DNA of 64,000 bases from IMGVR_UViG_3300028654_000384:62001-126000, one strand, 5' to 3'; counted from the first letter of the stretch, positions 933 to 54,396 are shown. The notes: generated by a model from the sequence alone, not told the origin. Numbers and translations: made by a program.

Positions 933-1415
933 ATGCAGACGACGCTCGGCAAGCTGAAGTACGTGATCAGCGAGGTGCTTGAGGCCAACCAGGTGCTCAA
1001 TCGCCTGCGTGCCGTTGCTGCTGGCAAGAAGCCCTACATGGTGGGCCAGTGGGCGACGGTGCCCCGAGATTATTCACAGCCCAGCGTGGGCGTCGCTAGT
1101 TGTTGGGTTGCCGAAGACCCCGAGTTGGGCAAGGTGTACCTGACGTTTAGCTCACACATCACCTACAAGAAGGTCAAGAACAGTCGCCTGCGCGATCCCG
1201 GCGGCACCCGCTATGCCTACACCGCGATCCTGTCGTCGCACCCGTGGGAGACGTTTGAGAACCACGGCAATGTGCCTGTCTTCAAGCTGGCGGCGACGGG
1301 TGAAGGCCGCGAGGACGACAAAGCACTGCAGGCGCGCAAGCAGATGGTGAAGCTGTTCGGCGTCGACCCGATGGCCCACAGGGGCCCACTTGAACCGACG
1401 GAGACACGAAGATGA
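933..1415 (+). CDS. Hypothetical protein with N-terminal LKxxIxE tag (putative virion-targeted)
   Basis: Starts MQTTLGKLKYVISEVLE. Confidence 0.75.
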   Translation: MQTTLGKLKYVISEVLEANQVLNRLRAVAAGKKPYMVGQWATVPRDYSQPSVGVASCWVAEDPELGKVYLTFSSHITYKKVKNSRLRDPGGTRYAYTAILSSHPWETFENHGNVPVFKLAATGEGREDDKALQARKQMVKLFGVDPMAHRGPLEPTETRR

Positions 1416-1747
1416 AGACGACAATCAGCAAGCTGAAGCAGTTGATCAACGAGCACCTGTTGGTCGAGGTACCCGTTGGATCCGGCATGCGCAAGCCGCA
1501 GTTCGGCCTGTCGTCGGGAGGCGGTGGTCTCAGGCCCGCCAAGTTCGATCCTGCAGTGCACGATCTCAAGGACGTCATGTGGGCCGTCATGGACGAGTTT
1601 GCGGGCGTTGCCTCTGACCTCGGTGTCGACGACATCAAGGATCCCGCCTTCATCGGTTACATCGGCGATCAGTTGACTGATAAGGGTGTGCCCAACGACA
1701 TCATCCTGCAGGTCAAGGCCAAGCTGCAACGCGGGCAGTCGCGTTAG
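1412..1747 (+). CDS. Hypothetical protein with N-terminal LKxxIxE tag
   Basis: Starts MKTTISKLKQLINEHLL; ATGA overlap with upstream gene. Confidence 0.75.
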   Translation: MKTTISKLKQLINEHLLVEVPVGSGMRKPQFGLSSGGGGLRPAKFDPAVHDLKDVMWAVMDEFAGVASDLGVDDIKDPAFIGYIGDQLTDKGVPNDIILQVKAKLQRGQSR

Positions 1748-1749
1748 GG

Positions 1750-1778
1750 TTGAACATCACGTGCAGTGTGTGTAAGAT
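1750..1778 (+). promoter_or_regulatory. Sigma70-type promoter
   Basis: TTGAAC-17 nt-TAAGAT with TG extension, upstream of 1802 ORF. Confidence 0.75.
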
Positions 1779-1801
1779 CATGAACGTGGGGAGGGCAGCA
1801 C

Positions 1802-2137
1802 ATGATCAATGAATTGTCACAGGCGAGGTTGTCGCCCGAGAGTGATGCGTACAAGCGCGTCTATGACCTGCTCGAGGAACACACAGTCTCGTGGGTGACT
1901 GACGCGTGGAAGAAGAACCCCACGCTCGATGCCATTCAACAGCAACCGCTGTACAAAGTGACGCTTGAACAGGTGTTGAATGCGCCCAACGGGCGTAGTC
2001 TAAATCCACAAAAAGTACGTGCTCACCTGGCGCTTCGTGATCAATTCGTGGTGTTGGCAGTCAATGGTGTTGAGGTTTGCGTGTTCGGTGAAGTTGCTGA
2101 TCAGATCTTCAATGCGTTGGCCGAACATGCGACCTGA
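1802..2137 (+). CDS. Hypothetical protein
   Basis: ORF downstream of promoter and GGAGGG ribosome site. Confidence 0.7.
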   Translation: MINELSQARLSPESDAYKRVYDLLEEHTVSWVTDAWKKNPTLDAIQQQPLYKVTLEQVLNAPNGRSLNPQKVRAHLALRDQFVVLAVNGVEVCVFGEVADQIFNALAEHAT

Positions 2138-2330
2138 TCTTGGTGACATTATTCGGTACAAGTTGGGAATGACAAAGGTGAACGGAGAGTGGGTCGAAGA
2201 GCTTAGTGATGATTTTGGAACTGTTATTTCGGTTAGCGATAATGACATCGGAGTGTTTTGGAGCGTTACTCAACGCATTGAACATCACTCTCCGGGTGAT
2301 CTAGTTGTAGTCGTTCGACGATCCAAGTGA
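2127..2330 (+). CDS. Small SH3-like hypothetical protein
   Basis: MRPDLGDIIRY...GTVISV...WS pattern of small beta-barrel phage proteins; AT-richer. Confidence 0.5.
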   Translation: MRPDLGDIIRYKLGMTKVNGEWVEELSDDFGTVISVSDNDIGVFWSVTQRIEHHSPGDLVVVVRRSK

Positions 2331-2336
2331 AGTGCG

Positions 2337-2618
2337 TTAGTTGAAGCGATCGACGACGTTGCCGTCCCGGTCGACGACCAGCCCCGCCTTGTCGAGTGCC
2401 AGCCCGATGGCGTGCTCGCTCGCACCCAGCCAGCTGACCAGCTCATCGAACGACACCTTGCCCGGTGTCACCCCCTTGGGATCCGTCTTGCGCTTGTTGC
2501 GCAGCGAGCTGACGTAGAGGTCTTCCCACGTCGTCCGCACTTCGTCGGGCGACGGCACCCGCTCGATGTCAATGCTCTCATGGATCAATGAGCGCAGGTG
2601 TTTGACTGTCGTCCGCAT
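2337..2618 (-). CDS. Hypothetical protein with N-terminal LRxxIxE tag
   Basis: True start MRTTVKHLRSLIHESID overlaps the TGA of the upstream minus-strand gene. Confidence 0.75.
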   Translation of the reverse strand: MRTTVKHLRSLIHESIDIERVPSPDEVRTTWEDLYVSSLRNKRKTDPKGVTPGKVSFDELVSWLGASEHAIGLALDKAGLVVDRDGNVVDRFN

Positions 2619-3502: not shown

Positions 3503-3543
3503 GTCGTTAAGTATTCACGTCGTGCCCATGTGGGCACGCATCT

Positions 3544-3572
3544 CTGAACACGGGCGCGGGTGATGATAGAAT
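3544..3572 (+). promoter_or_regulatory. Sigma70-type promoter, leaderless transcript
   Basis: CTGAAC-17 nt-TAGAAT, ATG 6 nt downstream. Confidence 0.7.
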
Positions 3573-3578
3573 TGACCC

Positions 3579-5456: not shown

Positions 5457-5484
5457 GTTCTTACGTAGAGAGTTTGTTGTTGTG

Positions 5485-5502
5485 TGGTCTCGAAAGAGAC
5501 CA
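5485..5502 (+). terminator. Perfect 7-bp hairpin with GAAA loop, possible terminator
   Basis: TGGTCTC-GAAA-GAGACCA after the 5016 gene; lacks a clear U-tract. Confidence 0.45.
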
Positions 5503-5539
5503 TTCGACGTTAAGGGCGTAGAGTGTTGTACTATGTACA

Positions 5540-7861: not shown

Positions 7862-7864
7862 AAC

Positions 7865-11566: not shown

Positions 11567-11593
11567 TGCGGGTGAATAATTAGGGTCAATTCC

Positions 11594-15099: not shown

Positions 15100-15108
15100 A
15101 ATCAGCAC

Positions 15109-15891: not shown

Positions 15892-16983
15892 TCAGTCAGC
15901 CAGTCTTGACAGGTGCTCGTACACCAGCTCATCGATGATCTGCCTGGCCTCGTCAATGGGATCCCACGTCTGCGTGTGATCAAAGCCCAGCTTCTTGACC
16001 TTCAACTTGCCGTCGGGGTCACGGGTGACCTTGGCATCCTGGCCTGGGTTGAACCGCGTGTTGGTGGTGGGCCCGGGACCGTAGGCCTTGCCCTTGTAGC
16101 GGGTGTGGACGGGACGGTTGTTCTTGCGGCCGTAGATGCGGTAGGTGTCCTTCGACGCGCCGGGGGTACGGACGCTGTTGGCCGGGTCAGCCTTGGGTTT
16201 CTTGGCCCAATCGGGCTGTTCTGCCTTGGGACGGTCATATGTACCAGCGCTGGGTGGCTTGGCCCAATAAGGTTGTTCTGCCTTGGGCGGGGGTGGGCGA
16301 CCGGGTCGAGGTTTTTCGACATAGCCCTTCTTGCGCTTGTCATTGATCTGTGCCTGCGCCACGTGGACCGCCATGCCGTTTGCACTGTAATCCTCGGTAG
16401 TGGTTTGACCCGCTGAACCGATGCGGCCCCATCGCTTGGTGAGTTTATTACCACTAACGCTGATCTCCCAGAACTTGCTCGATGAACCACCCACGAATTC
16501 GAAGTAGCGAGGCTCTCTGAACCCGCTCTTTCGTTGCTCCTCCTGCGCTTTCTTCGCCGAGGCCTGGTCATTGTATGTTCCACCGGCCGATGCTGGTGGG
16601 GGTGGCTGCTTTTTCCACCATGCATCGCGCTCGTCGCGTTTGCTGGAATTCCATCCGTCTTGTGGCGGGGGAGGTGCTGCCTTGGGTGGTGCCGCATGGG
16701 CCTTCGCCGCCTTGGGATCTTCATAACCCTTGAATTCGGCGCCGAACCTGAACTTGTTGGTGGGGTTGAGCAGCCGATCCTTGGCATTGTTGATGTCGAC
16801 CATCTTGCCGTGGGCGTTGGGATCGCCTGCGTTGCGGTCGGGGTGGTGCTGGAGGGCCAACTTCTTCCATGCCGCCTTGATCTGATCCTCCGACGCACCC
16901 TTGGGCACCCCGAGGATATCATAGGCGTTGAGCAGGGCCTCTTGGATCAGGCGCCTGACCTCGTGGATGTTGAGCCTCATCAC
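15892..16983 (-). CDS. J-domain plus WGR-domain protein with N-terminal tag
   Basis: AYDILGV...LALQHHPDRN; FWEISV......RWGRIGS.GQ...KRKKGY; TATTTA upstream. Confidence 0.85.
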   Translation of the reverse strand: MMRLNIHEVRRLIQEALLNAYDILGVPKGASEDQIKAAWKKLALQHHPDRNAGDPNAHGKMVDINNAKDRLLNPTNKFRFGAEFKGYEDPKAAKAHAAPPKAAPPPPQDGWNSSKRDERDAWWKKQPPPPASAGGTYNDQASAKKAQEEQRKSGFREPRYFEFVGGSSSKFWEISVSGNKLTKRWGRIGSAGQTTTEDYSANGMAVHVAQAQINDKRKKGYVEKPRPGRPPPPKAEQPYWAKPPSAGTYDRPKAEQPDWAKKPKADPANSVRTPGASKDTYRIYGRKNNRPVHTRYKGKAYGPGPTTNTRFNPGQDAKVTRDPDGKLKVKKLGFDHTQTWDPIDEARQIIDELVYEHLSRLAD

Positions 16984-26566: not shown

Positions 26567-26579
26567 TACTTATGCCAAA

Positions 26580-26891
26580 GTGATGAAGAAGCTACAGGAA
26601 GTCGACGTCATTCGCATCATGCGCGAGGAATGGTCAGCGAAGGTCAAGACCCTTGCCGAGGAGGTTGACGTCGTCATGAACTCCAAGGTGAAGGATGGTA
26701 GCACGGTGGGGGTGCTCTCGCCGGGATTAAAGATAAAACATAAACAAAGTGGGATTTTGTACACCGTCATGTCCGTCGGCCCACGTGATGTGCTGATCAG
26801 GCCGCCCGATGGAGACCCAAATGGATCAATTAGTGACACTGCGATGCTCGTCGATGCTGCTGAGCTAGAGCAGTCCTACAAGCTTGACTGA
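26580..26891 (+). CDS. Hypothetical protein with tag-like N-terminus
   Basis: VIRIMREEW; TACTTA at 26567. Confidence 0.7.
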   Translation: MMKKLQEVDVIRIMREEWSAKVKTLAEEVDVVMNSKVKDGSTVGVLSPGLKIKHKQSGILYTVMSVGPRDVLIRPPDGDPNGSISDTAMLVDAAELEQSYKLD

Positions 26892-26910: not shown

Positions 26911-27639
26911 ATGGCACAGCACGATAAAGAAGACCAGTTGACCGATCTCCTCAAGGGCGTCGACATCAAGGGCATCGTCAATGGCGCGTTGCAGAAGGGT
27001 GGTGCTGTCGCTGCCCCCATCGACGAGGCCTACGTGGCGCAGCCCAAGCCCTACTCGCAGGTGACGGAGTTCGTGTCCCAGAAGACGAAGGACGCCCACA
27101 CGTCGCTGTACCAGAAGTACGTCGAGACGTTGAACCGGGTGTCTGCTGAACTCGACACTGCTTCGAAGTCGGAAGCCAACAGCAACCACTCCGACTTCAG
27201 GAGCCTGAAGCTTGATGAGACGCGGTTGCTGAACGCGGTTTGGCTACATGAACTTTACTTCGCCAACTGCTTTGACGTTCATAGTGAGTGCTACATGAAT
27301 TCCATGGCGTACATCCGCCTGGAACGTGACTTCGGCACCTTTGAGGACGCACAGCAGGACATGATGGCATGTGCGCTGGCCTGCGGTGAGGGCTGGATGA
27401 TCACCGCCTACAACATGTTCCTCAAACGCTACGTCAACGTCATGGTCACCGACAACAGCCACGACGTGATGTTGGGGCTGTACCCGATCATCGTCATCGA
27501 CATGCATGCTCACGCGTACTTCAAGGACTACCTGACTGACAAGAAGAGCTACCTCGTAGCGATGATGCGCCAGCTCAACTGGAACGTCATCGAAGAGCGG
27601 TTCACCAAGGCTGAATCGATTGCCGAGGTGGTCAAGTGA
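26911..27639 (+). CDS. Fe/Mn superoxide dismutase-like protein with N-terminal extension
   Basis: AH..LY..Y, LHELYF, FGTFE, GEGW, IDMHAHAYF.DY, NW..IE.RF. Confidence 0.8.
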   Translation: MAQHDKEDQLTDLLKGVDIKGIVNGALQKGGAVAAPIDEAYVAQPKPYSQVTEFVSQKTKDAHTSLYQKYVETLNRVSAELDTASKSEANSNHSDFRSLKLDETRLLNAVWLHELYFANCFDVHSECYMNSMAYIRLERDFGTFEDAQQDMMACALACGEGWMITAYNMFLKRYVNVMVTDNSHDVMLGLYPIIVIDMHAHAYFKDYLTDKKSYLVAMMRQLNWNVIEERFTKAESIAEVVK

Positions 27640-28289
27640 AACTCCGCGTCGGCGACCTCAAGCGCATCCTTGTCGAGGCCCAGCGTGGCCAACTGACGAC
27701 CTATCACCGCATCCTGTTGACCGAGGAGGGCGATTCGGCTGCCCACACCGAAGGTGGTAGCGGTGAGTCGCTCGACAATCAGGTCGACAAGTACCTGATG
27801 CAGTACGAGAACGACTCCAAGAAGACCGACGGTGAAGTCCCCGGGGGTACGGTGGGCCAGATGGAGTCGGCTGACTGGCGCGACATCTGCCGTGGCATTC
27901 TGAATGAGGCAGGCGATGATGACGCCGCCGACAAGCCCGCCAAGCCTGACCCCGATGCCGATGGCACCGAGGACGCCGGCGCGCCCGCCAAGCTCGGTGT
28001 TGACAGCCTCGACGTCGAGAAGTTCGCCAGCAACGTCGTCCGCCTGATCGAGAACTACGACAGCCTGCTCGAGGTGCGCAATACCCTGATGCGCCGCGCC
28101 AAGGCATTCTTGGCCAAGACCTACGATGATGAGGTCTGCAAGACCTACGACGACGTGCTGCGCGATGACCACGGCATGGAGCCCGGTGCCAACAAGGGCG
28201 AGCTCAACGCCGACAAGTACCCAGCGCCCGCCGCCGACCGTGCCAGTGGCAGCGCCGAAGCGGGCCCCGGAGGGGGAGGCGCTCCGTGA
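27636..28289 (+). CDS. Tagged hypothetical (putative virion) protein
   Basis: MKLRVGDLKRILVEA. Confidence 0.7.
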   Translation: MKLRVGDLKRILVEAQRGQLTTYHRILLTEEGDSAAHTEGGSGESLDNQVDKYLMQYENDSKKTDGEVPGGTVGQMESADWRDICRGILNEAGDDDAADKPAKPDPDADGTEDAGAPAKLGVDSLDVEKFASNVVRLIENYDSLLEVRNTLMRRAKAFLAKTYDDEVCKTYDDVLRDDHGMEPGANKGELNADKYPAPAADRASGSAEAGPGGGGAP

Positions 28290-30034: not shown

Positions 30035-30406
30035 ATGGCAAACTTGTGGATCAAGGATCAGAACGGCGATCCCAGCGTCATTGTGACACTGGTCGCGGTG
30101 TCGTTTGTGGCGGTGACAGTGGGCTACGTGATGTCGCTGTTCGATCGCATCGGCACCGTGTCAATCAGGCCCTTCGACGTCGCGGCGTGTGGTGCTTATT
30201 TCGGGAGCGTGATGGCCGCCTTCGTGGGCCACCATTGGGTGACGACCAAGTACGTCAATGGTCAAGTCGTCACCGATGATTCGTCGGCGACCGTCACCAC
30301 GACCCAATCAGGCAGCGGTAACACCGTCACCGCGACGACTGATGCAACGTCGACGACCACGACGATGCCAGTGGTGCCAGGAACGAACCCCGGGGTCACG
30401 ACATGA
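30035..30406 (+). CDS. Two-TM membrane protein (holin-like?)
   Basis: Hydrophobic segments, Thr-rich tail, TATTTA at 30010. Confidence 0.5.
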   Translation: MANLWIKDQNGDPSVIVTLVAVSFVAVTVGYVMSLFDRIGTVSIRPFDVAACGAYFGSVMAAFVGHHWVTTKYVNGQVVTDDSSATVTTTQSGSGNTVTATTDATSTTTTMPVVPGTNPGVTT

Positions 30407-31623
30407 CGACCATTGTCACCGACGATGCCCTCCGCGAGATGGTGCGCGAGGCGCTCTCCAACACGGGCTGGAGCAATGAGGACGCGGGCACTGCCAACGT
30501 CAACCCCGTCGTCGATCCGTCGAAGGCCGTCACCGACCCCGTCAACCCCAACTTCACGCCCCAGACCAAGACCGAGTTCGGCGTGGCGATCAATCAGCTA
30601 GTCAGGAACCTACCCGACACCGAGATGCCCGACCTGTATGGCGTCGTCAAGAAGACGCTAGACCAGCGGACTGAAAAAGAAGAGGAACAAGCGATGGACA
30701 AGAAGGCAGTGCAAGGCGGTTCTCAAGAAGCGATCGATGACGCGAAGAAGAAGCAAGCTGAGGCGGTGATCCGCAAGGCCGTCCGCAAGGCGCTGGCTGA
30801 GGCACCCCTGCCCCCGGTCAAGAAGATCCCGATCGGTGTCCACGGCAAGGAATTCAACGATCGGGTCGAGAAGACGAAGGCCGGCCTCAAGAAGTCGTTG
30901 GGCACCGCGGCGGCTGAACTCGATAAGCCTGATCAAGAAGAACTTGATGCTGTTGCCGATGGCGGTAATGCACCTAAAGGGCGCAACAAGGCATACAAGC
31001 CCGGCGCGTTGGGGGGCATGCAGGACGTCGGCGGTCAGTCGTTTGAGGCCATTGCCAAGGAAGTGGGCATGTCGGTCGCCGGTGCCAAGCAGCTCGTCGA
31101 CAAGTCACTGGAGAAGTTGAAGTGGCTGCACCGCCTGCCCGAAGACGACCGTGACATCCTGATCCTCACCACCGCCAACGACTACATCAAGACGCTGGCG
31201 CAATCGGGCGAGCTGACGGCGCCCGACATTCAACTGATGAAGGATCACCCGACGATCGTCACCGAGCTCGACGGTTTCCGCGAGTACCTGCACGACGTCA
31301 TCACCAAGGCACGCAAGCCCGGCAAGAAAATCAACGCCTTCGGCGAGGGGACGGAGGCCGACGAGGTCAACCAGCTCAACGAGTCCGCCAAACGCTTGGT
31401 CACCACGTTGACCGAGGTCATCGGCAACCACGCCGTGGTGCAGGCCGACATGCGAGGCCCCTACATCGTCATCGAGGGCCGCGAAGCCCGCCCGCGTGAT
31501 CCCAACAAGACGCAGTACGCCGCGGGCACCAAGGTGCGAGTGCACCAGCGGGCCAGCAAGGGCGTGTCATTGGTGGAGATGCCCAACGGGGAACAGTGGA
31601 CATTGAAGGGCATGAAGGGCTAA
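30403..31623 (+). CDS. Tagged protein with sigma-region-4-like HTH
   Basis: LREMVREAL; SFEAIAKEVGMSVAGAKQLVDKSLEKL. Confidence 0.6.
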   Translation: MTTIVTDDALREMVREALSNTGWSNEDAGTANVNPVVDPSKAVTDPVNPNFTPQTKTEFGVAINQLVRNLPDTEMPDLYGVVKKTLDQRTEKEEEQAMDKKAVQGGSQEAIDDAKKKQAEAVIRKAVRKALAEAPLPPVKKIPIGVHGKEFNDRVEKTKAGLKKSLGTAAAELDKPDQEELDAVADGGNAPKGRNKAYKPGALGGMQDVGGQSFEAIAKEVGMSVAGAKQLVDKSLEKLKWLHRLPEDDRDILILTTANDYIKTLAQSGELTAPDIQLMKDHPTIVTELDGFREYLHDVITKARKPGKKINAFGEGTEADEVNQLNESAKRLVTTLTEVIGNHAVVQADMRGPYIVIEGREARPRDPNKTQYAAGTKVRVHQRASKGVSLVEMPNGEQWTLKGMKG

Positions 31624-36211: not shown

Positions 36212-37480
36212 GTGGGAGGTGCGAGCGGGCATCTTCGACATTTGCACGACAACCTCGACCTGACGTTCGGGGAGTTGAAGGATGTGTTGTCGTCGGCGGC
36301 CGATGGCAAGCTCGAGCGCACCAGTGAAAAACTCGACGGGATCAACCTAGTCTTCACGTGGGCGGGTGATCAACTGAAAGTAGCCCGCTCGGGCGGTGAC
36401 ATCAAGAGCGGCGGCATGGACGCTGTAGGTCTGGCGACCAAGTTTCAGGGGCGCGGCAACCTGGCCGACGCCTTCAACGGTGCCTTCAAGGTGCTCCGCG
36501 ACGCGGTGGGCTCGCTGAGCGACGCCGTCCGAGCCAAGGTCTTCAACGACGGCCGCACCTGGTACTCGATTGAGGTCATCTACTCCAAGAATCCCAACGT
36601 CATCAACTATGACGCCAACTACGTTGTCTTCCACGCCAGTCCCGTCTTCCACGTCTCACGCGCCGGCGAGGTCAAGAAGCTCGACTCTGCTCCCGGCGTG
36701 GCCTTGTTGGAGAAGCACGTCGACAACATGCAGCGTGCCCTGACGCAGCGTAGTTGGCAGGTCAGGGGCCCGGCTCTGGTTCGCCTCAAGAAGCTGAGCG
36801 ACGGCAACGCCGTCAAACGTGCCTTCACCATGATCGGTCAGGCACAGTCGATCGCCGGAGTGGGTGACGATGATACCCTCGGCGATTACCTCGCGGCGCG
36901 GATGACTGATGAAGTCGCGGGGCTCGACCTGCCACCCAAGGTCGCCAAAGCGGTGACGGCTCGGGCGGTGGGCAACCCGGGCGCACCGTCGTTGCTCAAC
37001 CTGAAGAAGCTCGTCTCGCCCGACCAATATGCCGCCGTCAATCACTTTGTCAAGGCATCGCCGGGCCTGCTGAAGAAGTTCATTGAGCCCATCGAGCGTG
37101 CCGTCCATGAGTTTGCGATTGAGGCCCTGCGTGGCATGCACTCCACGCTCATCGGCAACAACGACGCCGAGGTGCAGCGCCTGCGGGGTGAGGTCGCCCG
37201 GGCCGTCAAGGCGATTGAAGCCAGCGGCGACGCCACGGCGATGGACGTGTTGCAGAAGCAGATGACGAAGTTGGGTAGCATCGAGAATGTCAGCAGCGCG
37301 ATGGAGGGCGTTGTCTTCACGTGGAAGGGCAACTCATATAAGTTCACGGGTGGGTTTGCGCCTGCCAACCAGATCCTCGGCCTGTTCAAGTACGGGCGCA
37401 AGGGCGTAAAGATCCCCGTTCAAGAGGCCTATTTAAGGCACGCGGTCGCTCGGTTGGTCGCCAATGGGAGACACAGATGA
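36212..37480 (+). CDS. Ligase-superfamily covalent nucleotidyltransferase-like protein (DUF6267-like)
   Basis: GGASGHLRHLHD start; motif I EKLDG, motif IV EGVV, motif V-like YKFTG. Confidence 0.65.
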   Translation: MGGASGHLRHLHDNLDLTFGELKDVLSSAADGKLERTSEKLDGINLVFTWAGDQLKVARSGGDIKSGGMDAVGLATKFQGRGNLADAFNGAFKVLRDAVGSLSDAVRAKVFNDGRTWYSIEVIYSKNPNVINYDANYVVFHASPVFHVSRAGEVKKLDSAPGVALLEKHVDNMQRALTQRSWQVRGPALVRLKKLSDGNAVKRAFTMIGQAQSIAGVGDDDTLGDYLAARMTDEVAGLDLPPKVAKAVTARAVGNPGAPSLLNLKKLVSPDQYAAVNHFVKASPGLLKKFIEPIERAVHEFAIEALRGMHSTLIGNNDAEVQRLRGEVARAVKAIEASGDATAMDVLQKQMTKLGSIENVSSAMEGVVFTWKGNSYKFTGGFAPANQILGLFKYGRKGVKIPVQEAYLRHAVARLVANGRHR

Positions 37481-38286
37481 GGGTTAGGTTGGGCTTGTTG
37501 AGAGAGCAGATACGCGCCATTCTGACGGAGTCGCCCGCCTCAAACGCATTTGAGAAGCACGTTGCATCAGCCGTAAAGGCCGCCCTTTCTGGGACAGGTG
37601 CCAAGATTGAACACGCTGGCTCTTCTGAGTACTCTGACATCCGCATTGACATCCCGGGCATTGGGTCATCATTCCTCGAAGTGAAGCTGACGTCAGGTGA
37701 CAACCTTGGCAACCCACGCCTGCAATACGATGGTAATCAGTGGATCGTTGCCGGCGACAGTGGTTCGCCGCTGGCAGCCTATGCAGTAGAGTTCATGAAT
37801 GAGTCACCCGAAGCGCAGGCCTTCATCAATGACCTCAAGGCGTTCCTGAAGACTGACACCGTCAGGTTACAAGGCAAGAAGCCCGGGTCGGTAACGTTGC
37901 CGCAGATCAAGGCGTTCTTAGCCAAACGACCCAACAAGAACATCGCTGAGCTTGACAGCGTCGATGCCGCCGCGTTGGCCACACAGCACTATGCCGTCGC
38001 CAAGAAGGAACCTGCTCACTACGTACAGGCAGGCGACGACTTCTACCTCATGGGTAGTGCAGATCCATTGGACTTGAACCTGGTCAACGATGGGCAGATC
38101 CCCGTCCTCAGGGGCATGGGTCGGCTGGCGGTTCGCATTGCCGATCGCAGCGCGCGCTATGAGGTACAAGTGTCAGTGAAGATGTGGAAGCACGATCCGA
38201 GCCCATTCTCGGCCATGCTGCCGACCTCTAAGGTCAATCCCTTCACTGCACTGGCTAAGTCACTGAAGGCCCGCAAGCGCGGCTAA
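37477..38286 (+). CDS. Tagged PD-(D/E)XK nuclease-like protein
   Basis: LLREQIRAILTES; SDIRI......FLEVK. Confidence 0.6.
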   Translation: MRVRLGLLREQIRAILTESPASNAFEKHVASAVKAALSGTGAKIEHAGSSEYSDIRIDIPGIGSSFLEVKLTSGDNLGNPRLQYDGNQWIVAGDSGSPLAAYAVEFMNESPEAQAFINDLKAFLKTDTVRLQGKKPGSVTLPQIKAFLAKRPNKNIAELDSVDAAALATQHYAVAKKEPAHYVQAGDDFYLMGSADPLDLNLVNDGQIPVLRGMGRLAVRIADRSARYEVQVSVKMWKHDPSPFSAMLPTSKVNPFTALAKSLKARKRG

Positions 38287-40481: not shown

Positions 40482-40521
40482 TGTGCCTGTAACTTTGGTG
40501 TGCGTGGCATACTTATCAGCG

Positions 40522-41562
40522 ATGGCGTCCGACAAACTGCTACGTGAGTTCATCAGTGAGGTGGTGCTGCTCACTGAGGAGGGCGAAGGTGGGGGTGAAT
40601 ACGCTGACTTATCAATGGCAGATGCTACGGGCAGTCCCTACGGCATGTCGTTCGGCTCCAACGACGACCTCTACAACACCTTCGTCAAACCCTTCACCGA
40701 CGTGGTGGGCGTGGCCGCGGGCAAGACCAAGGCCCTGTCACAGAAGGGTCAAACCCTGGTACGCGTTGCCTTCGAGGCCGTGGCCACGACGCTGGTGCCC
40801 ATCCTCCGCGACTCCTACGGCGAGATCTTCGAGAAGGAGAAAGAGGAACTCGACAAGATTCGTCGTGACTACCACGACGTCTTTCAGGCCACTTGGGATG
40901 CCTTCGAAGACCACGATGCGTTGCTGGCCGCATTCCTCCATGCGCCGGCGTCGTTCATCACGTCGCGATTGGCCAAGCAATCACCCAAGGTCGTCATCAA
41001 GATGATCAGCGTGCTGACGGGCGGCACCCTCGACACGTGGCTCGATAAGGTGAAGAACGCCTTCGGTGTCGAGGGTGGCCCATCAGGTGCCAACAAGCCG
41101 GTGCACGGTGGTGACAGTGGGCCCATGGAGAGCACCCTGCATGAGGATGGGGGTAACCACCCACCCATTGAGCAGGTGCTGACCAGCGACAAGGTGAGGG
41201 CCCGTGTCGCCGATGCGCCGGTGACCAAGAAGTTGCAGCAACGTGGGACGGAGATCACGCGCGGCACCCTGGAGAAGGTCTACAAGCAGGCCAAGGGGGT
41301 GTTGGGTGCCAAGTCGCTGGAGCAATTGCAACAGTTGGTGCATAGACCGCTCAAGGGCCTCGACAAGATGAAGGGCGTCCCACAACAGGAGCGTCAGGCG
41401 GCGGAACAGCAGATCTTGGCGGCGGCGAAAAAGTCGATGCGTGAATTCTACACGAAAAACCTCGAGGGTCAGGTGAAGCAGGCGCTCGACCAGGGAGTGC
41501 CCGACGACTCGCCTTATATCAGTGACTACCGGCGCGTCATCAGCAAAATCAAAGCACTGTGA
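40522..41562 (+). CDS. Tagged hypothetical (putative virion) protein
   Basis: MASDKLLREFISEV; TACTTA at 40510. Confidence 0.75.
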   Translation: MASDKLLREFISEVVLLTEEGEGGGEYADLSMADATGSPYGMSFGSNDDLYNTFVKPFTDVVGVAAGKTKALSQKGQTLVRVAFEAVATTLVPILRDSYGEIFEKEKEELDKIRRDYHDVFQATWDAFEDHDALLAAFLHAPASFITSRLAKQSPKVVIKMISVLTGGTLDTWLDKVKNAFGVEGGPSGANKPVHGGDSGPMESTLHEDGGNHPPIEQVLTSDKVRARVADAPVTKKLQQRGTEITRGTLEKVYKQAKGVLGAKSLEQLQQLVHRPLKGLDKMKGVPQQERQAAEQQILAAAKKSMREFYTKNLEGQVKQALDQGVPDDSPYISDYRRVISKIKAL

Positions 41563-46308: not shown

Positions 46309-46314
46309 TAGTTA
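46309..46314 (+). promoter_or_regulatory. TANTTA motif (putative late promoter), representative of about 15 copies
   Basis: TAGTTA 5 nt before ATG; equivalent copies are listed in the findings. Confidence 0.6.
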
Positions 46315-46319
46315 GCTAC

Positions 46320-46640
46320 ATGAAGACGACAGTGGGCAAGTTGAAGCAGTTCATCACAGAAGCGATGGACATTCCGCAGTTCAAGTCGATCAAGGGGTTG
46401 TCACGCTTTGTACACAACAAACATGCACACGGTACCGTGGTGACTCGGGAAGCGATCGCCTTCACCAATCCTCCTCCCGAAGCAGTCAGGTTCACCGTCG
46501 GCGCTGGTTATTTGGTCGGTTGGAACACTGATGACCCACGACAACGTAACATTGATTGGGAGCTCCACATCAATGAGCCGGGTGGGTTTACCGATGGACC
46601 ACCTTGGGAATACAAGTGGGTGAAAGTGGGGACGGGATGA
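46320..46640 (+). CDS. Tagged hypothetical protein
   Basis: MKTTVGKLKQFITEA; TAGTTA at 46309. Confidence 0.75.
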   Translation: MKTTVGKLKQFITEAMDIPQFKSIKGLSRFVHNKHAHGTVVTREAIAFTNPPPEAVRFTVGAGYLVGWNTDDPRQRNIDWELHINEPGGFTDGPPWEYKWVKVGTG

Positions 46641-46900
46641 AGACGACAGTCGGCAAGCTTCGTAACCTCTGTGCTGAGGCGGTCTCGGCGCACCCCGACT
46701 ACTTGAAAAAGGAAGCGCTGCGTGAGGCCCTCCAACAAATCATCACCACGTCGGTAGCATCAGGTGATGTAGCGACCCAAGAAAGGCTCGATGGCCTCTT
46801 CGGCGACCTATCGATGGCACTGAACGCCTTGAAAGGCGTTCCCTTTGACGTGTGGGTGAAGATGGCGACGAAAGCGACGAAGGTGAGGAAGTCCCGTTGA
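46637..46900 (+). CDS. Tagged hypothetical protein
   Basis: MKTTVGKLRNLCAEA. Confidence 0.75.
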   Translation: MKTTVGKLRNLCAEAVSAHPDYLKKEALREALQQIITTSVASGDVATQERLDGLFGDLSMALNALKGVPFDVWVKMATKATKVRKSR

Positions 46901-50338: not shown

Positions 50339-50343
50339 TACTT

Positions 50344-50703
50344 ATGAGGATGCGATTAAAACTCGGTACGTTGAAACGACTCATCAGGGAGGCTTCGATG
50401 GCATCTGCTGTTGATCTGTTGTCACAATGGGCAAAGAGATACGATTTCGAACCTTCTTCGGGAAAAGAGTGTGAACGCTATCTCGAAGACATGGCAGAAA
50501 CAGAAATTCCCAAAGTTTGTTTTTATGACAACAATAGCACAGTTCATGAACCACCGATTGCTTGGGTTGCAGCTGATGATCGGATCATGATCGTCAGCGA
50601 CGGAAGTGGTCCCACGGGCGTATTCTGTCGCGAAGTTTCGAAAGACGAACTTGAAGCGGCACTTCAACCTGACGCGGCGCCAACTGACATCACTCCGGAG
50701 TGA
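50344..50703 (+). CDS. Tagged AT-rich inserted gene (moron-like)
   Basis: MRLKLGTLKRLIREA; TACTTA at 50339. Confidence 0.7.
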   Translation: MRMRLKLGTLKRLIREASMASAVDLLSQWAKRYDFEPSSGKECERYLEDMAETEIPKVCFYDNNSTVHEPPIAWVAADDRIMIVSDGSGPTGVFCREVSKDELEAALQPDAAPTDITPE

Positions 50704-51254: not shown

Positions 51255-51301
51255 TCGGCCTATTTCGGCCTGAGGTCTTCAGACTGAGGGTATTTAGCGG
51301 C

Positions 51302-51553
51302 ATGGCCCGCATTGCCCTGACACCTGACCGCCTCAAGCACATCATCAAGGAAGAGCTCGCACAGGCCCCCGTCGCAGGCGCGGGCATCGGCAAGCTACTG
51401 AGCGATCTCGTCGGCACCTTCGAGGCCAAGCTGAGCCAACAGTACCCGGGTGACGTCGTCAAGCGCGAGGCCGCTGATCTCAAGACGCAGATCGAGGCGT
51501 TGCTCCGTGCCGCGGTGACCAAGGTCAAAACCGCACAGGGGAAGGCGTCGTGA
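51302..51553 (+). CDS. Tagged small protein
   Basis: DRLKHIIKEEL; TATTTA at 51291. Confidence 0.7.
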   Translation: MARIALTPDRLKHIIKEELAQAPVAGAGIGKLLSDLVGTFEAKLSQQYPGDVVKREAADLKTQIEALLRAAVTKVKTAQGKAS

Positions 51554-52140
51554 GGACGTCAGCTGCAGGCATACAATTTATAACGCATGAAGAAGGCGTC
51601 GTGCTCCACACTTACAATGATGTCGGTGGGAAAGCAACGATCGGAATTGGCCACCTGCTCGGCCCGGGTGAGTCGTATCCCAACGGCATCACCCTTGCAC
51701 AGGCACAGGCCATGCTCGCGAACGACCTTGCCCGGTTCGAGGCCGCCATCAGCGGCGGCGTCAAGGTGACGATCACCCAACACATGTTCGACGCGCTCGC
51801 CAGCTTTACGTACAACCTGGGCACCGGCGCACTCGCCTCCTCTACACTCCTCAAGCTCCTCAACAAGGGTGACTTCGCCGGTGCGGCCGCCCAATTTCCG
51901 GCCTGGGACAAGGTCGACGGCGTGCCCAATGCCGAGATCCTCGGCCGGCGCAAGCGTGAAGCTGCACTGTTCTTGACCCCCGATGCGGCCCACGTCGCTC
52001 CCCCGCCCGCGCCGCCTGTTCCCACCCCTCCCGTGCCGCCGAGTATTCCTGCGGTCCCCGTGGCGCCTCCACCCGCGCCCACCAATGCATTCGCCGACTT
52101 CTTTGCGATGATCTTGAGACTGTTCACCGGAGGCAAGTGA
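51550..52140 (+). CDS. GH24 phage lysozyme (endolysin) with Pro-rich tail
   Basis: HEEG....YND.GGK.TIGIGH, FDALASF.YNLG, RRKREAALF. Confidence 0.9.
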   Translation: MRTSAAGIQFITHEEGVVLHTYNDVGGKATIGIGHLLGPGESYPNGITLAQAQAMLANDLARFEAAISGGVKVTITQHMFDALASFTYNLGTGALASSTLLKLLNKGDFAGAAAQFPAWDKVDGVPNAEILGRRKREAALFLTPDAAHVAPPPAPPVPTPPVPPSIPAVPVAPPPAPTNAFADFFAMILRLFTGGK

Positions 52141-53000
52141 TGACGCAGACATACCGCAAGACGTGGCGACCTGATAGCACCCAACCACTGCCCGCAGGCC
52201 AAGCCGCATTCCACGACCTGCCACTCGGGGCGGCTAACCTCGCCTCGGTGCTGGCGGCGGGCGCTGCTGTGCCCAATCAGATCGTGGAACAGGGTGGCAT
52301 CCTCGACCTCAGGCCCCTGTGCCCACCAATTGACAACCAGTACCAAGTGTCCGACTGCGTTGCCGATGCCACGTGTTCGGCGTTGGAGTTCTGTCAGATC
52401 CGCAATGGCCTGCCCTTCGTCAAGCTGTCACGCCTGTTCATGTACTACAACGCTCGATTGCAGACGCAGGACACCGCCAACGATGCAGGCACCTACATCA
52501 GGTTGGCCTTTAGCACTCTCGCGTCGCTGGGCACCTGTCCTGAGTCCACGTGGGCCTATGACACCTCAATGATCTTCACCCGCCCGTCGTGGGAGAGCTA
52601 CCGCGAGGCGTATCCCAACAAGGTCACCAACTTCTACTCGATCAGCCAGCTGTTGATCGCGGCGAACAACATCATCAATCCCAATTCGTTGACGGCCTCC
52701 ATCAAGCAAGCACTGCAGGCGATCCACCCGGTCGTCTTCGGCATGACCGTTGATGAAGGTTACGACAACACGGGTCGCGACGGCATGGTGGCGATGCCGG
52801 CATCGAAGCGCATCAGTCCCGGTGGCCACGCACAGATGATCTGTGGCTACAACGACAACCTACAGCGATGGATCGTCAAGAACAGCTGGGGCACTGGTTG
52901 GGGCGACGGGGGATACTGCTACGTGCCCTATGCCTACTTGGGTGCGTCCGGCGTCGACGACATCTGGGTGCCGACGCTGGCACCGGGCCAGCGGGCGTGA
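52137..53000 (+). CDS. Papain-family (C1) cysteine peptidase
   Basis: DLR...PIDNQ..VSDCVA, GGHA...GY, IVKNSWG..WGDGGY. Confidence 0.9.
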   Translation: MMTQTYRKTWRPDSTQPLPAGQAAFHDLPLGAANLASVLAAGAAVPNQIVEQGGILDLRPLCPPIDNQYQVSDCVADATCSALEFCQIRNGLPFVKLSRLFMYYNARLQTQDTANDAGTYIRLAFSTLASLGTCPESTWAYDTSMIFTRPSWESYREAYPNKVTNFYSISQLLIAANNIINPNSLTASIKQALQAIHPVVFGMTVDEGYDNTGRDGMVAMPASKRISPGGHAQMICGYNDNLQRWIVKNSWGTGWGDGGYCYVPYAYLGASGVDDIWVPTLAPGQRA

Positions 53001-53332
53001 CACACCTGCTGCGCACCTTCATCCACGAGGCATTGCTCCACGAGCTGCGCCGTGACCACAAGTTCATCACCCACCTGCGGACTTCTGGGTTGGGCGAGCC
53101 CGGGTCGAAGGAAGGCTTTGAAGCGCGACGACTGGCGGATGATTGGCTGCGCGACGTGGAATTAGAGCTGGGTCGGCCCCTGCGACCCGCTATCAAGGCA
53201 GGCGTCCGCAAGTTCGTCGAGCGGCGGTGGGCAGGCCTCCGCGCACGTTTCAAGGGCGATGAACAGGCGGCGCAACAAACGCTTTCCAACTTGCTCAATA
53301 CCAAGTACGTTGACCTGAGGACGGGAGACTAA
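52997..53332 (+). CDS. Tagged hypothetical protein
   Basis: MTHLLRTFIHEALLHE. Confidence 0.7.
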   Translation: MTHLLRTFIHEALLHELRRDHKFITHLRTSGLGEPGSKEGFEARRLADDWLRDVELELGRPLRPAIKAGVRKFVERRWAGLRARFKGDEQAAQQTLSNLLNTKYVDLRTGD

Positions 53333-53333
53333 G

Positions 53334-53834
53334 ATGGGCATCAAGATCTTGCGACACTACACTAGCAGTGCACGGCCTCTCATACAGATCGCGGCGTGGG
53401 CAGCCGTCGCCGGCACGGTGACGCTGGCACTGGCCACGTGCACGTCGTGTCACAGCACCGGGGTGCTCATCGTGCCCACCAACCCGCCGACCATCACCGA
53501 TCAATCGGCATGTGCACAGGCGTGTGGCAACCTCGTGGCACTGGGTTGCGTGGAAGGCACGCCCATCGACACTCACCAGACGTGTAAGGTCGACGCCGAC
53601 TGCTTGGGAGTGACAGGCGTCCACGATGAATATCAGACGTGCTCCGTCGCCTTCACCTGCATGGTCACCTGCGTCAACTTCTGCACCGCGACGGAGAACA
53701 CCGGCGTGTGGCTCGACCCCACGTGTGCGGCCAAGATCACTTCGTGTGACCAACTGAGCACCTGTCCGGGCCCACAGACGGCGGGCACCAGCTGCACCGG
53801 CCCGGGCTGCAAGGTGGCGCCGAGTGGCAAGTGA
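53334..53834 (+). CDS. Cys-rich secreted protein / lipoprotein
   Basis: Hydrophobic leader ending ATCTSC; many Cys in mature part. Confidence 0.65.
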   Translation: MGIKILRHYTSSARPLIQIAAWAAVAGTVTLALATCTSCHSTGVLIVPTNPPTITDQSACAQACGNLVALGCVEGTPIDTHQTCKVDADCLGVTGVHDEYQTCSVAFTCMVTCVNFCTATENTGVWLDPTCAAKITSCDQLSTCPGPQTAGTSCTGPGCKVAPSGK

Positions 53835-54396
53835 CCGTGACCTGTTGCGGCAATTGATCCGCGAAGTTCTCACCGACTTCAACACCAAGACGCTCGGCAA
53901 GGACGGCGTTGCGGGCAACGTCTTCAACACGGGCCTGACGACGGGCGGTGCGGGTGTGTTGAAGCAGAACGGCAACATCCTCGATGATGAGGATGCCGAC
54001 GAACAGCACGACGAACAGAGCACACAGCGGGCGGCGTGCTGTTTAATCGTGGGCCACGATGGGACAGTGCTGTGCGTGTCACGGAAGGATGATCCCACCG
54101 CTTGGGGCATGCCGGGAGGGAAGGTTGATCCCGGCGAAGACGACGAGACTGCTGCGGGTCGAGAGTTGACGGAAGAAGTGGGCCTGACAGCGACGGCGCT
54201 GCACCCGGTCTTCACTATGCGCGACAGGCAGGGGTTCACAACGACAACATTTGCCTGTGAAGTTGACGGCCAGATCAACACCAGCGAATCGGGCGTCATC
54301 AGGTGGGTGCACCCGAGCCTGTTGTGCAATGATGCCCACTCGCCGTTCGCTGCGTATAATCGGGCCCTGTTTGCCGAGCTGGGAGTGAAAACTTGA
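53824..54396 (+). CDS. Tagged NUDIX hydrolase
   Basis: DLLRQLIREV; PGGKVDPGEDDETAAGRELTEEVG. Confidence 0.9.
   Translation: MASDRDLLRQLIREVLTDFNTKTLGKDGVAGNVFNTGLTTGGAGVLKQNGNILDDEDADEQHDEQSTQRAACCLIVGHDGTVLCVSRKDDPTAWGMPGGKVDPGEDDETAAGRELTEEVGLTATALHPVFTMRDRQGFTTTTFACEVDGQINTSESGVIRWVHPSLLCNDAHSPFAAYNRALFAELGVKT

What the first reader, a model, noticed from the sequence alone, without database searches (positions are those of the whole stretch)
933..54396. About 15 unrelated proteins share an N-terminal L-(K/R)-x-x-I-x-E tag: putative capsid-targeting/cleavage signal
Seen: MQTTLGKLKYVISEV (933), MKTTISKLKQLINEH (1412), MRTTVKHLRSLIHES (2618-), MRLNIHEVRRLIQEA (16983-), VIRIMREE (26580), MKLRVGDLKRILVEA (27636), LREMVREA (30403), LLREQIRAILTES (37477), LLREFISEV (40522), MKTTVGKLKQFITEA (46320), MKTTVGKLRNLCAEA (46637), MRLKLGTLKRLIREA (50350), RLKHIIKEE (51302), LLRTFIHEA (52997), LLRQLIREV (53824). 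A similar helix sits at the C-terminus of 36212 (EAYLRHAVARL) and 39117 (EALLRHYVKLL). Established: T4 internal proteins use a roughly 10-aa capsid-targeting sequence (MKTYQEFIAE) cut after Glu by the prohead protease. Inference: this is a packaging tag that loads an enzyme toolkit (NUDIX, nuclease, J-domain, HTH protein) into the head for injection.
Basis: partly seen in the sequence, partly recalled or inferred. Interest (0 to 1): 0.7.

Follow-up and report, generated by a model that had tools for sequence, protein, structure and literature searches.

The report
Capsid-address tag on many phage proteins
An uncultured 359-kb soil phage with a T4-type head puts the same 14-residue N-terminal peptide, ending in the T4 prohead-protease cut site, on about 30 otherwise unrelated proteins; this is most likely a label that loads them into the capsid, a mechanism known from T4 but here used on a much larger scale.

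Summary
All 15 listed N-termini are in the sequence: 14 are strong and 26580 is weak. The motif is far more common at N-termini than chance allows.

- **Consensus:** M-(K/R)-(L/T)-(T/S)-h-x-x-L-(K/R)-x-h-I-x-E-(A/V). Glu is invariant, and in 13 of 23 tags it is exactly residue 14.
- **Count:** the 216-kb contig holds at least 27 tagged genes. With the tag removed, their bodies show no similarity to one another.
- **Level of selection:** codons vary at synonymous sites, so selection acts on the peptide and not on the DNA.

- **Head genes:** the window is 100% identical to part of a 359-kb assembly. That assembly carries a T4-type head module with a Peptidase_S77 (gp21-like) protease and a Gp23 capsid protein.
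- **Tags in the head module:** four more tagged proteins lie in that module, two of them just downstream of the protease. The same is seen in independent relatives.
- **Cut site:** the tag ends in I-x-E followed by A, which matches the published T4 gp21 site L/I-x-E.
- **Promoter:** many tagged genes carry the promoter-like motif that also precedes the capsid, scaffold, neck and tail genes.

Packaging, cleavage and injection remain untested. I rate this a new member of a known kind (the T4 capsid-targeting sequence), with an unusually large and partly enzymatic cargo.

The parts
933..1415 (+). Tagged gene, 160 aa, MQTTLGKLKYVISE|V; no known family
   Evidence: first possible start after an in-frame stop
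1412..1747 (+). Tagged gene, 111 aa, MKTTISKLKQLINE|H
2337..2618 (-). Tagged gene, 93 aa, MRTTVKHLRSLIHE|S; its start overlaps the stop of the upstream gene (TGATG)
15892..16980 (-). Tagged gene, 362 aa, MRLNIHEVRRLIQE|ALLNAYDILGV; J-domain (residues 19-77) plus WGR domain. The tag abuts the start of the J-domain.
   Evidence: DnaJ 63 bits, WGR 58 bits
16985..16991 (-). Class B promoter-like motif TATTTAC, 4 nt before the start of the J-domain gene
26567..26573 (+). Class B promoter-like motif TACTTAT upstream of gene 26580
26580..26891 (+). Weak tag candidate, 103 aa, (V)MKKLQEVDVIRIMRE|E; has an ortholog in relative G001 (MKIISAKDIEAMVEA)
   Evidence: scores below the matrix threshold
27636..28289 (+). 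Tagged gene, 217 aa, (V)KLRVGDLKRILVE|A; the G001 ortholog lacks the tag
30403..31623 (+). Tagged gene, 406 aa, MTTIVTDDALREMVRE|A; weak sigma-70 region 4 match, below threshold
   Evidence: same start called independently
37477..38286 (+). Tagged gene, 269 aa, MRVRLGLLREQIRAILTE|S; weak lead to a restriction-endonuclease-like fold. Structural matches begin at residue 16-18, after the tag.
   Evidence: same start called independently
40510..40516 (+). Class B promoter-like motif TACTTAT, 5 nt before the start at 40522
40522..41562 (+). Tagged gene, 346 aa, MASDKLLREFISE|VVLLTEEGEGGG. In 90 homologs the N-terminus LLREY(V/I)RxVLKEDDGG and a Gly-rich linker are conserved. In relative G002 the gene lies beside the portal gene.
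46309..46315 (+). Class B promoter-like motif TAGTTAG, 4 nt before the start at 46320
46320..46640 (+). Tagged gene, 106 aa, MKTTVGKLKQFITE|A
46637..46900 (+). Tagged gene, 87 aa, MKTTVGKLRNLCAE|A
50339..50345 (+). Class B promoter-like motif TACTTAT, 4 nt before the start at 50350
50350..50703 (+). Tagged gene, 117 aa, MRLKLGTLKRLIRE|A. A public gene caller chose Met-17 at 50398 instead.
51291..51297 (+). Class B promoter-like motif TATTTAG, 4 nt before the start at 51302
51302..51553 (+). Tagged gene, 83 aa, MARIALTPDRLKHIIKE|E
52997..53332 (+). Tagged gene, 111 aa, (V)THLLRTFIHE|A
53824..54396 (+). Tagged gene, 190 aa, (V)ASDRDLLRQLIRE|V; NUDIX domain at residues 68-173. The G002 NUDIX homolog (150 aa) lacks the tag and the N-terminal extension.

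Best explanation
The peptide is a T4-type capsid-targeting propeptide. My reading of how it works is below; the last three steps are inferred, not shown.
1. The tagged proteins are made late in infection, together with the head proteins.
2. The N-terminal amphipathic helix, with conserved L-(K/R)-x-h-I, binds the scaffold and core of the assembling prohead, so the protein is enclosed.
3. The phage's gp21-family serine protease then cuts after the invariant Glu (I-x-E, then usually A or V). This frees the mature protein inside the head.
4. At least some of the cargo, such as the J-domain/WGR protein and the NUDIX hydrolase, then leaves with the DNA at the next infection.

Shown: the tag, its strict N-terminal position, its presence on unrelated proteins and on head-module proteins, the protease and the T4-type head genes in the same genome, and the shared promoter-like motif.

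Inferred: binding to the core, cleavage, and ejection.
For: 1. **Enrichment and fixed register.** 15 of 18 strict motifs lie in the first 20 residues (2.2 expected). Glu is residue 14 in 13 of 23 tags.
2. **Match to the T4 site.** In the 23 tags P1 is always Glu, P3 is I in 17, V in 3 and L in 2, and P1' is Ala in 11. T4 gp21 cuts after L/I-x-E, first seen at a Glu-Ala bond, and T4 targeting peptides are 10-19 residues long (PMC9026906).
3. **Glu is specifically kept.** When the Glu column is left out of the scoring, N-terminal matches in three independent relatives still carry Glu in 11 of 15 cases and never Asp. Only 2 of 33 internal matches in the same three relatives carry Glu.
4. **Same genome holds the machinery.** Locus L127 is 100% identical to 21,041 bases of the window and lies on the same 359,321-bp contig as L136. 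L136 carries Peptidase_S77 and Gp23. Scores on the near-identical locus L137 are 84.5 and 255 bits. The protease aligns to T4 gp21 structure 5JBL at E = 1.8e-14.
5. **Tags in the head module.** Four tagged proteins sit there: two between terminase and portal, and two shortly downstream of the protease, after a 126-aa gene and the deformylase gene.
6. **Relatives show the same.** Tagged small proteins lie next to the protease in G001, G002 and G003, and 2.7-3.8 kb upstream of the capsid gene in many of 80 related loci.
7. **Bodies are unrelated**, and synonymous codons vary at about the rate codon usage predicts (216 identical against 195 expected).
8. **Shared promoter-like motif.** TA[CGT]TTA precedes the capsid, scaffold, core, neck, sheath and tube genes. 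It is found at 9 of 25 tagged genes against 13 of 346 others (p = 1.8e-6).
9. **Precedent.** The internal proteins of T-even phages are diverse proteins that share only the targeting sequence (PMC3012670).
Against: - There are no protein data of any kind: no virion proteomics and no mapping of N-termini.
- No cultured relative is close. The best capsid-protein match among isolates is 34.5-48% identical.
- The upstream half of the tag, L-(K/R), has no counterpart in the T4 targeting sequence as I recall it.
- The tag is not stable between orthologs. The G002 NUDIX and the G001 ortholog of gene 27636 lack it.
- About 30 cargo species is more than T4 has.
- The mature parts show no bias in charge (median pI 6.2 against 6.4 for all proteins), unlike the basic T4 internal proteins.
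- I first noticed the promoter motif partly on tagged genes, so the association test is not fully blind. That the motif marks late genes is inferred only from which genes it precedes.
- The capsid protein's own N-terminal L-x-E-G is not conserved; this phage has LAAG there.
Confidence: 0.65

Rival explanations
1. The helix is a general docking or oligomerisation peptide for some other shared partner. Candidates are the phage's own GroEL or J-protein chaperone system, a replication or transcription hub, or the membrane. On this view it is not cleaved and has nothing to do with the capsid.
For: - The tag is a short amphipathic helix with conserved hydrophobic positions.
- The phage encodes GroEL and a J-domain protein.
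- Tagged genes are scattered among replication and metabolic genes rather than sitting in the structural block.
Against: - This does not explain why Glu is invariant and Asp never occurs.
- It does not explain the fit to L/I-x-E followed by A.
- It does not explain why the tag sits on small proteins in the head operon in this phage and its relatives.
- It does not explain the promoter motif shared with structural genes.
Confidence: 0.15
2. The peptide is only a protease-removable propeptide, or a degradation signal, that keeps the proteins inactive or short-lived until late in infection. It has no role in targeting, and the proteins are not carried in the virion.
For: - The cut-site part (I-x-E-A) is the best conserved part of the tag.
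- In T4, targeting and processing depend on different residues (PMC9026906), so the cut site alone does not prove targeting.
Against: - The gp21-family protease acts inside the prohead in T4 (PMC9026906).
- The conserved upstream L-(K/R) and the fixed 14-residue register go beyond what cleavage needs, since T4 needs little more than L/I-x-E.
- The same full tag is present on small proteins in the head operon that by position look like core proteins.
Confidence: 0.12
3. The similarity arises at the DNA or RNA level. Either a mobile promoter-plus-start cassette is spread by recombination, as proposed for T4-type phages, or the first codons are constrained by translation start on leaderless messages.
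For: - Many tagged genes have a promoter-like motif only 3-8 nt before the ATG.
- The MKTT subgroup shares more identical codons than expected (68 against 46.6), and two members share 86% identity over 37 nt.
- Regulatory cassettes that shuffle genes are described for T4-type phages (PMC2839356, title and abstract).
Against: - Outside the MKTT subgroup, codon identity is at the codon-usage expectation (51 against 53.6).
- Leu, Lys/Arg and Glu are each encoded by several different codons.
- About 25 leaderless genes with the other promoter class lack the tag.
- The peptide is conserved in relatives whose G+C content is 37-44% against 58% here.
Confidence: 0.04

Closest known systems
T4 capsid targeting sequence (CTS) of internal proteins IPI, IPII, IPIII and Alt, removed by the prohead protease gp21
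   Same: - A short N-terminal peptide (10-19 residues in T4, 14 here) on otherwise unrelated proteins.
- It ends in hydrophobic-x-Glu, matching the gp21 site L/I-x-E, often before Ala.
- The same genome holds a gp21-family protease, a gp23-family capsid protein, and portal and scaffold genes in T4 order.
- Tagged genes are scattered outside the head module, as the T4 ip genes are.
   Different: - The consensus adds a conserved Leu-(Lys/Arg) five to six residues before the Glu, and the Met-to-Glu distance is fixed.
- There are about 30 tagged proteins, against a handful in T4.
- The cargo includes a J-domain/WGR protein and a NUDIX hydrolase.
- The mature parts are not notably basic.
- There is no experimental proof of packaging or cleavage here.
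Propeptides of head and ejection proteins in phiKZ-like giant phages (phiKZ, 201phi2-1, SPN3US), cut by a diverged gp21 homolog
   Same: - A large phage with many head-internal proteins processed after Glu by a gp21-related protease.
- The processing status of homologs varies between related phages (PMC5694885), as tag presence does here.
   Different: - Their site is S/A/G-x-E, whereas here P3 is I, V or L, as in T4.
- Most of their propeptides are longer than 100 residues; here the tag is 14.
- This phage shows T4-type head genes: a Pfam Gp23 capsid protein, a portal matching Portal_T4, and T4 gene order.
T4 prohead core proteins gp67, gp68 and scaffold gp22
   Same: - Small proteins encoded beside the protease, and a long helical scaffold-like protein, carry one or several hydrophobic-x-Glu sites (MALSRSELKSVIKELLVEILSEG; MSKQLFEEALAD...).
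- Gene order matches T4.
   Different: No detectable sequence similarity: Pfam and PHROGs give no hit. Their identity as core proteins rests on position alone.

Membership tests
T4-type capsid-targeting propeptide system | A gp21-family (Peptidase_S77) prohead protease in the same genome | tested here: met
   It is absent from the 216-kb IMG/VR contig. It is present on the 359-kb assembly that is 100% identical to the window. PF03420 scores 84.5 bits against a cut-off of 27. The protein aligns to T4 gp21 structure 5JBL at E = 1.8e-14.
T4-type capsid-targeting propeptide system | A T4-type head module: gp20-like portal, scaffold and gp23-family capsid protein | tested here: met
   Portal_T4, Gp23 (255 bits) and Terminase_6N are present in T4 gene order.
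T4-type capsid-targeting propeptide system | A short N-terminal peptide ending in L/I-x-E | tested here: met
   In the 23 tags P3 is I in 17, V in 3, L in 2 and C in 1. P1 is Glu in all 23. Glu is residue 14 in 13 of 23. Glu persists in relatives when it is not used for scoring.
T4-type capsid-targeting propeptide system | The tag is shared by proteins that are otherwise unrelated | tested here: met
   BLASTP of the tag-less bodies gives no pair below E = 0.01.
T4-type capsid-targeting propeptide system | The same signal or site is on prohead core and scaffold proteins | tested here: met
   Tagged small proteins lie in the head operon near the protease in this phage, in G001-G003, and in many of 80 related loci. 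That they are core proteins is inferred from position only.
T4-type capsid-targeting propeptide system | Expressed together with the head genes (late) | tested here: inconclusive
   The promoter-like motif TA[CGT]TTA is shared with capsid, scaffold, neck, sheath and tube genes. It is enriched at tagged genes (p = 1.8e-6). No RNA run was listed.
T4-type capsid-targeting propeptide system | Physical incorporation of tagged proteins into proheads and virions | not testable with these tools
   This needs virion proteomics or reporter fusions.
T4-type capsid-targeting propeptide system | Removal of the peptide by cleavage after the Glu | not testable with these tools
   This needs mapping of protein N-termini. 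The protease-tag complex prediction gave no answer.
phiKZ-type head propeptides | Cleavage motif S/A/G-x-E, mostly with long (>100 aa) propeptides | tested here: not met
   P3 is I, V or L and never S, A or G in the 23 tags. The tag is about 14 residues long. The motif is as given in PMC9026906 and PMC5694885.

The most novel reading that the evidence does not exclude
The 14-residue tag may be a clade-wide address label that can be read straight from sequence. If so, the packaged and ejected protein set of a large, widespread group of uncultured T4-headed jumbo phages could be listed from metagenomes alone. In this phage about 8% of genes would be cargo, including a J-domain/WGR protein, a NUDIX hydrolase and a possible nuclease, which would mean a far larger injected enzyme kit than in any studied phage. 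The tags also appear to move between genes: orthologs differ in having one, and the MKTT subgroup shares codons. The peptide deformylase gene inside the head operon might be tied to the maturation of these N-termini.
Probability: 0.3. Interest if true: 0.75.

Novelty: new member of a known kind. Interest (0 to 1): 0.55.

Why it matters
- **Predicting cargo from sequence.** If the tag works as in T4, packaged proteins of uncultured jumbo phages can be predicted from sequence alone. Such proteins are usually the first weapons against host defences and the first tools of host take-over.
- **Testable candidates.** Most of the cargo here has no known family, so the tag turns about 30 unknown genes into candidates that can be tested.
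- **A possible engineering tool.** It may offer a portable packaging tag for phages outside the T-even group.
- **Spread of the mechanism.** It shows that the T4 solution, diverse cargo with one address, reaches far beyond enterobacterial phages. More than 578 related capsid genes were found in IMG/VR.

Tried and rejected
- **Protease-tag complex prediction.** I folded the protease from L137 with residues 1-40 of gene 46320. Verdict: no answer, score 0.16 against a mark of 0.34. It counts neither for nor against.
- **Protease in the contig.** A Peptidase_S77 search of the 216-kb contig found nothing. The contig simply starts after the head module. Four walking look-ups reached it.
- **Phage collection, DNA search.** A megablast of 20 kb against 50,697 phage records gave no match. 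No close cultured relative exists.
- **Family searches.** Pfam and PHROGs on tagged proteins and on the small head-module proteins gave mostly no hits.
- **Protein-atlas search.** For gene 30403 there was no usable hit and the model was poor. For gene 37477 there were only weak leads to a restriction-endonuclease-like fold.
- **RNA runs.** None was listed. The 21 runs that hold the DNA are rhizosphere metagenomes.
- **Search of the 359-kb record by handle.** The record is not held.
- **Charge of the mature parts.** No bias, so it is uninformative.
- **Capsid N-terminus as a tag copy.** I considered that L-x-E-G at the capsid protein's N-terminus is a copy of the tag and rejected it. The Glu is Q or A in several relatives and in this phage. 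A conserved R-L-x-E-K-W at about residues 25-29 is a better candidate site, but it is untested.
- **Translation-start constraint.** Rejected, because the other class of leaderless genes lacks the tag.

Full report
**What the window is.** The window is bases 62,001-126,000 of a 215,857-bp IMG/VR viral contig that CheckV rates 63% complete. G+C content is about 58%. The contig encodes:
- a T4 gp13-like neck protein, two tail-sheath paralogs of about 1000 aa each, and a protein resembling a tape measure;
- a DnaE-type polymerase of 1233 aa (window 7865-11566), plus UvsX, a gp32-like SSB, DnaB, ribonucleotide reductase, thymidylate synthase and GroEL.

No phage in the collection of 50,697 records is similar at the DNA level.

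**Checking the observation.** I called genes on the whole contig with a codon-bias model (367 genes).
- The strict motif L[KR]x[LIVMF][LIVC]xE occurs 18 times in 62,208 residues. Fifteen occurrences are in the first 20 residues, against 2.2 expected.
- Re-examining start codons added four more N-terminal cases. A later scan added 18575, 140707, 182681 and 191501 in contig coordinates. The contig therefore has at least 27 tagged genes.
26580 is weak, and 50350 has a rival start at 50398.
- Aligned on the Glu, the 23 best tags give M-(K/R)-(L/T)-(T/S)-h-x-x-L-(K/R)-x-h-I-x-E-(A/V). Leu is at -6 in 20 of 23, Lys or Arg at -5 in all 23, Ile at -2 in 17 of 23, and Glu in all 23. The start Met is exactly 13 residues before the Glu in 13 of 23.
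- A matrix from these tags gives 20 N-terminal matches at score 12 or more, against 0.4 expected from the internal rate.
- For 15 of 27 genes no alternative in-frame start lies upstream, so the N-terminal position is not an artefact of my choice of start.

**Are the proteins unrelated, and is the conservation in the protein or the DNA?**
- With the tag cut off, all-against-all BLASTP gives no pair below E = 0.01.
- The codons for the conserved Leu, Lys/Arg and Glu differ from gene to gene.
- Across 14 tags in the same register, identical codons at identical residues number 216 against 195 expected from codon usage.
- Only the six-member MKTT subgroup shows an excess (68 against 46.6). The others do not (51 against 53.6).
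- Selection therefore acts on the peptide. Some tags are recent copies of one another.

**Relatives and the head module.**
- The neck protein found relatives in IMG/VR. Three long ones were fetched whole: G001 (140 kb), G002 (119 kb) and G003 (66 kb), with G+C of 37-44%.
- Each has the T4 gene order: terminase, portal, a gene of 269-285 aa, the protease, small genes, a long helical scaffold-like gene, then the capsid gene. The protease scores 85-96 bits against Peptidase_S77.
- In all three, small proteins next to the protease begin with the tag: MKMTRNDLKNLVKECLVEILAEG and MATKLTPDMLRKLVLEE in G001; MKITRSELKSVIKECLKELITEG in G002; MNRKQLKELVKECLVELLSEG and MAILSEKMLRQLVQEE in G003.
- The matrix trained on the window's genome finds N-terminal enrichment in these independent genomes.
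- A capsid-protein alignment found more than 578 relatives. Among the 80 loci fetched, tagged small genes cluster 2.7-3.8 kb upstream of the capsid gene, and other tagged genes follow downstream, for example MKLTERQLRKIILEE.
- When the Glu column is left out of the scoring, N-terminal matches in G001-G003 still have Glu in 11 of 15 cases and never Asp. Only 2 of 33 internal matches in these three genomes have Glu.

**The phage's own head genes.**
- A homolog search with the protein of gene 40522 showed that the identical protein lies on assemblies of about 359.3 kb.
- Locus L127 from one of them is 100% identical to 21,041 bases of the window.
- Walking upstream from the contig's start passed a patatin gene, seven Gly-rich paralogs and a 2512-aa repeat protein. 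It then reached the head module, on the same 359,321-bp contig as L127 (L136) and on a near-identical contig (L137).
- In L137 coordinates the module reads as follows:

| L137 coordinates | Gene | Note |
|---|---|---|
| 1145-3985 | terminase, 946 aa | |
| 4023-4658 | 211 aa | MTTQTPKIGLLRLRHLINEE, tagged |
| 4655-4960 | 101 aa | (V)IRVSVERLRRLIKEE, tagged |
| 5020-8463 | portal, 1147 aa | carries an intein |
| 8460-9326 | 288 aa | |
| 9323-9997 | protease, 224 aa | PF03420, 84.5 bits |
| 10001-10381 | 126 aa | |
| 10381-10875 | peptide deformylase, 164 aa | |
| 10883-11344 | 153 aa | MALSRSELKSVIKELLVEILSEG, tagged |
| 11393-11665 | 90 aa | MKTNVKSVKLTPALLKRIIEEE, tagged |
| 11686-12228 | 180 aa | |
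| 12285-14381 | scaffold-like, 698 aa | MSKQLFEEALAD... |
| 14445-16394 | capsid protein, 649 aa | PF07068, 255 bits |

- The protease aligns to the T4 gp21 structure 5JBL at E = 1.8e-14.
- The missing protease was therefore an effect of contig truncation, and four more tagged proteins sit in the head module.

**Fit to the T4 system.**
- According to PMC9026906, gp21 cuts after Glu in the short motif L/I-x-E, first seen at a Glu-Ala bond.
- The T4 internal proteins carry N-terminal propeptides of 10-19 residues that target them to the prohead core and are then removed.
- Targeting and processing depend on different residues. Asp in place of the final Glu blocks processing but not targeting.
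- PMC3012670 states that the internal proteins of T-even phages are a diverse set sharing only the targeting sequence.
- The tag here ends in I-x-E followed by A or V, is 14 residues long, and has an invariant Glu. The site is of the T4 type, not the phiKZ type (S/A/G-x-E).

**Promoter context.**
- Two promoter-like motifs stand out in an unsupervised k-mer count upstream of genes.
- Class A, cGTGGTAGrrTTAGATC, directly abuts the ATG of about 25 small genes in the 148-213 kb part of the contig. None of these has the tag.
- Class B, TA[CGT]TTA, lies 16-28 nt upstream of the capsid, scaffold, 90-aa core and other head genes. In the 20-kb head locus, 7 of its 9 occurrences are intergenic and just upstream of a gene. 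It also lies upstream of the neck, sheath-2 and tube genes.
- Class B lies 3-8 nt upstream of many tagged genes. It is present at 9 of 25 tagged genes against 13 of 346 others (odds ratio 14, p = 1.8e-6).
- Several tagged genes without their own motif follow a tagged gene in tandem: 933/1412, 46320/46637, 52997/53824.
- This fits co-expression with the structural genes. However, I first saw the motif partly on tagged genes, and its late timing is inferred.

**What the cargo is.**
- Solid assignments are a J-domain plus WGR protein (window 15892-16980, minus strand) and a NUDIX hydrolase (53824-54396). In the J-domain protein, cutting after Glu-14 would leave ALLNAYDILGV, a normal J-domain start.
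- The 406-aa protein at 30403 has only a sigma-70 region 4 match below threshold and no usable atlas hit.
- The 269-aa protein at 37477 has weak leads to a restriction-endonuclease-like fold. Structural matches start at residue 16-18, after the tag.
- The 346-aa protein at 40522 belongs to a family of 90 or more phage proteins with a conserved N-terminus LLREY(V/I)RxVLKEDDGG followed by a Gly-rich linker. In G002 its gene lies beside the portal gene.
- The remaining tagged proteins have no recognisable family.
- Tags are not stable in evolution. The G002 NUDIX and the G001 ortholog of gene 27636 lack one. This resembles the variable processing of homologs reported for phiKZ-like phages (PMC5694885).

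**Verdict.**
It is supported by five independent lines of context: the fit to the cut site, the invariant Glu, the protease and T4-type head in the same genome, tags on head-operon proteins across the clade, and the shared promoter motif.
- It has no direct support: packaging, cleavage and injection are untested. The complex prediction gave no answer and no RNA data could be listed.
- I put the capsid-targeting reading at about 0.65. The further claim that the enzymes are injected as a toolkit is weaker.
- In kind this is the T4 capsid-targeting sequence in a new, uncultured lineage. It has its own consensus and a much larger cargo list.

Noticed in passing
contig G000 148,000-213,000 (outside the window); weaker copies at window 921-927 and 33049-33055: A second promoter-like motif, cGTGGTAGrrTTAGATC, directly abuts the ATG of about 25 small genes. 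It looks like an extended -10 element placed so that the messages would have no leader. These are probably early genes, and none carries the tag.
   Followed up: partly
L137 739-17042; window 26567-26573, 40510-40516, 46309-46315, 50339-50345, 51291-51297: The motif TA[CGT]TTA lies just upstream of the capsid, scaffold, core, neck, sheath and tube genes and of many tagged genes. It is a candidate late promoter. At the tagged genes it is only 3-8 nt from the ATG, which implies messages with little or no leader.
   Followed up: partly
window 42441-43976 and 43992-45374: Malate synthase and isocitrate lyase genes lie side by side, so the phage carries the whole glyoxylate shunt. Nearby are a CN_hydrolase (31630-32409), a pterin-4a dehydratase (33056-33466) and a second, untagged NUDIX gene (39787-40242).
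   Followed up: no
L137 10381-10875; also G003 22400-22882: A peptide deformylase gene sits inside the head operon, between the prohead protease and the tagged core proteins. A link to the maturation of the tagged N-termini is conceivable but untested.
   Followed up: no
L137 5020-8463 and 1145-3985: The portal gene is 1147 aa long and carries an intein with an HNH domain. The large terminase is also unusually long (946 aa).
   Followed up: no
L134 1-9934 and L135 2459-9997 (just upstream of the IMG/VR contig's start): A 2512-aa repetitive fibre-like protein is followed by seven paralogous genes of 237-271 aa, at least three of them Gly-rich. These repeats probably explain why several assemblies break at this point.
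   Followed up: partly
window 36242-37480 (+) and 39117-39749 (-): A ligase-like protein (KxDG motif) and a cytidylyltransferase-like protein both end in EAxLRHxV. In relative G001 the two are fused into one 580-aa protein ending in EITLRSFV. This is a conserved C-terminal helix of unknown role and is distinct from the N-terminal tag.
   Followed up: partly
L003 6131-9115 and 9963-13013; L003 14558-16024 and 16847-18538: There are two tail-sheath paralogs of about 1000 aa each. A GIY-YIG endonuclease gene lies between them, and two HNH homing-endonuclease-like genes lie on either side of the tail-tube gene.
   Followed up: no
capsid genes of about 70 related loci (L045-L124) and L137 14445-16394: The capsid protein's N-terminal L-x-E-G is not conserved; this phage has LAAG there. 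The sequence R-L-x-E-K-W at about residues 25-29 is nearly invariant and is a better candidate for the capsid maturation site.
   Followed up: partly
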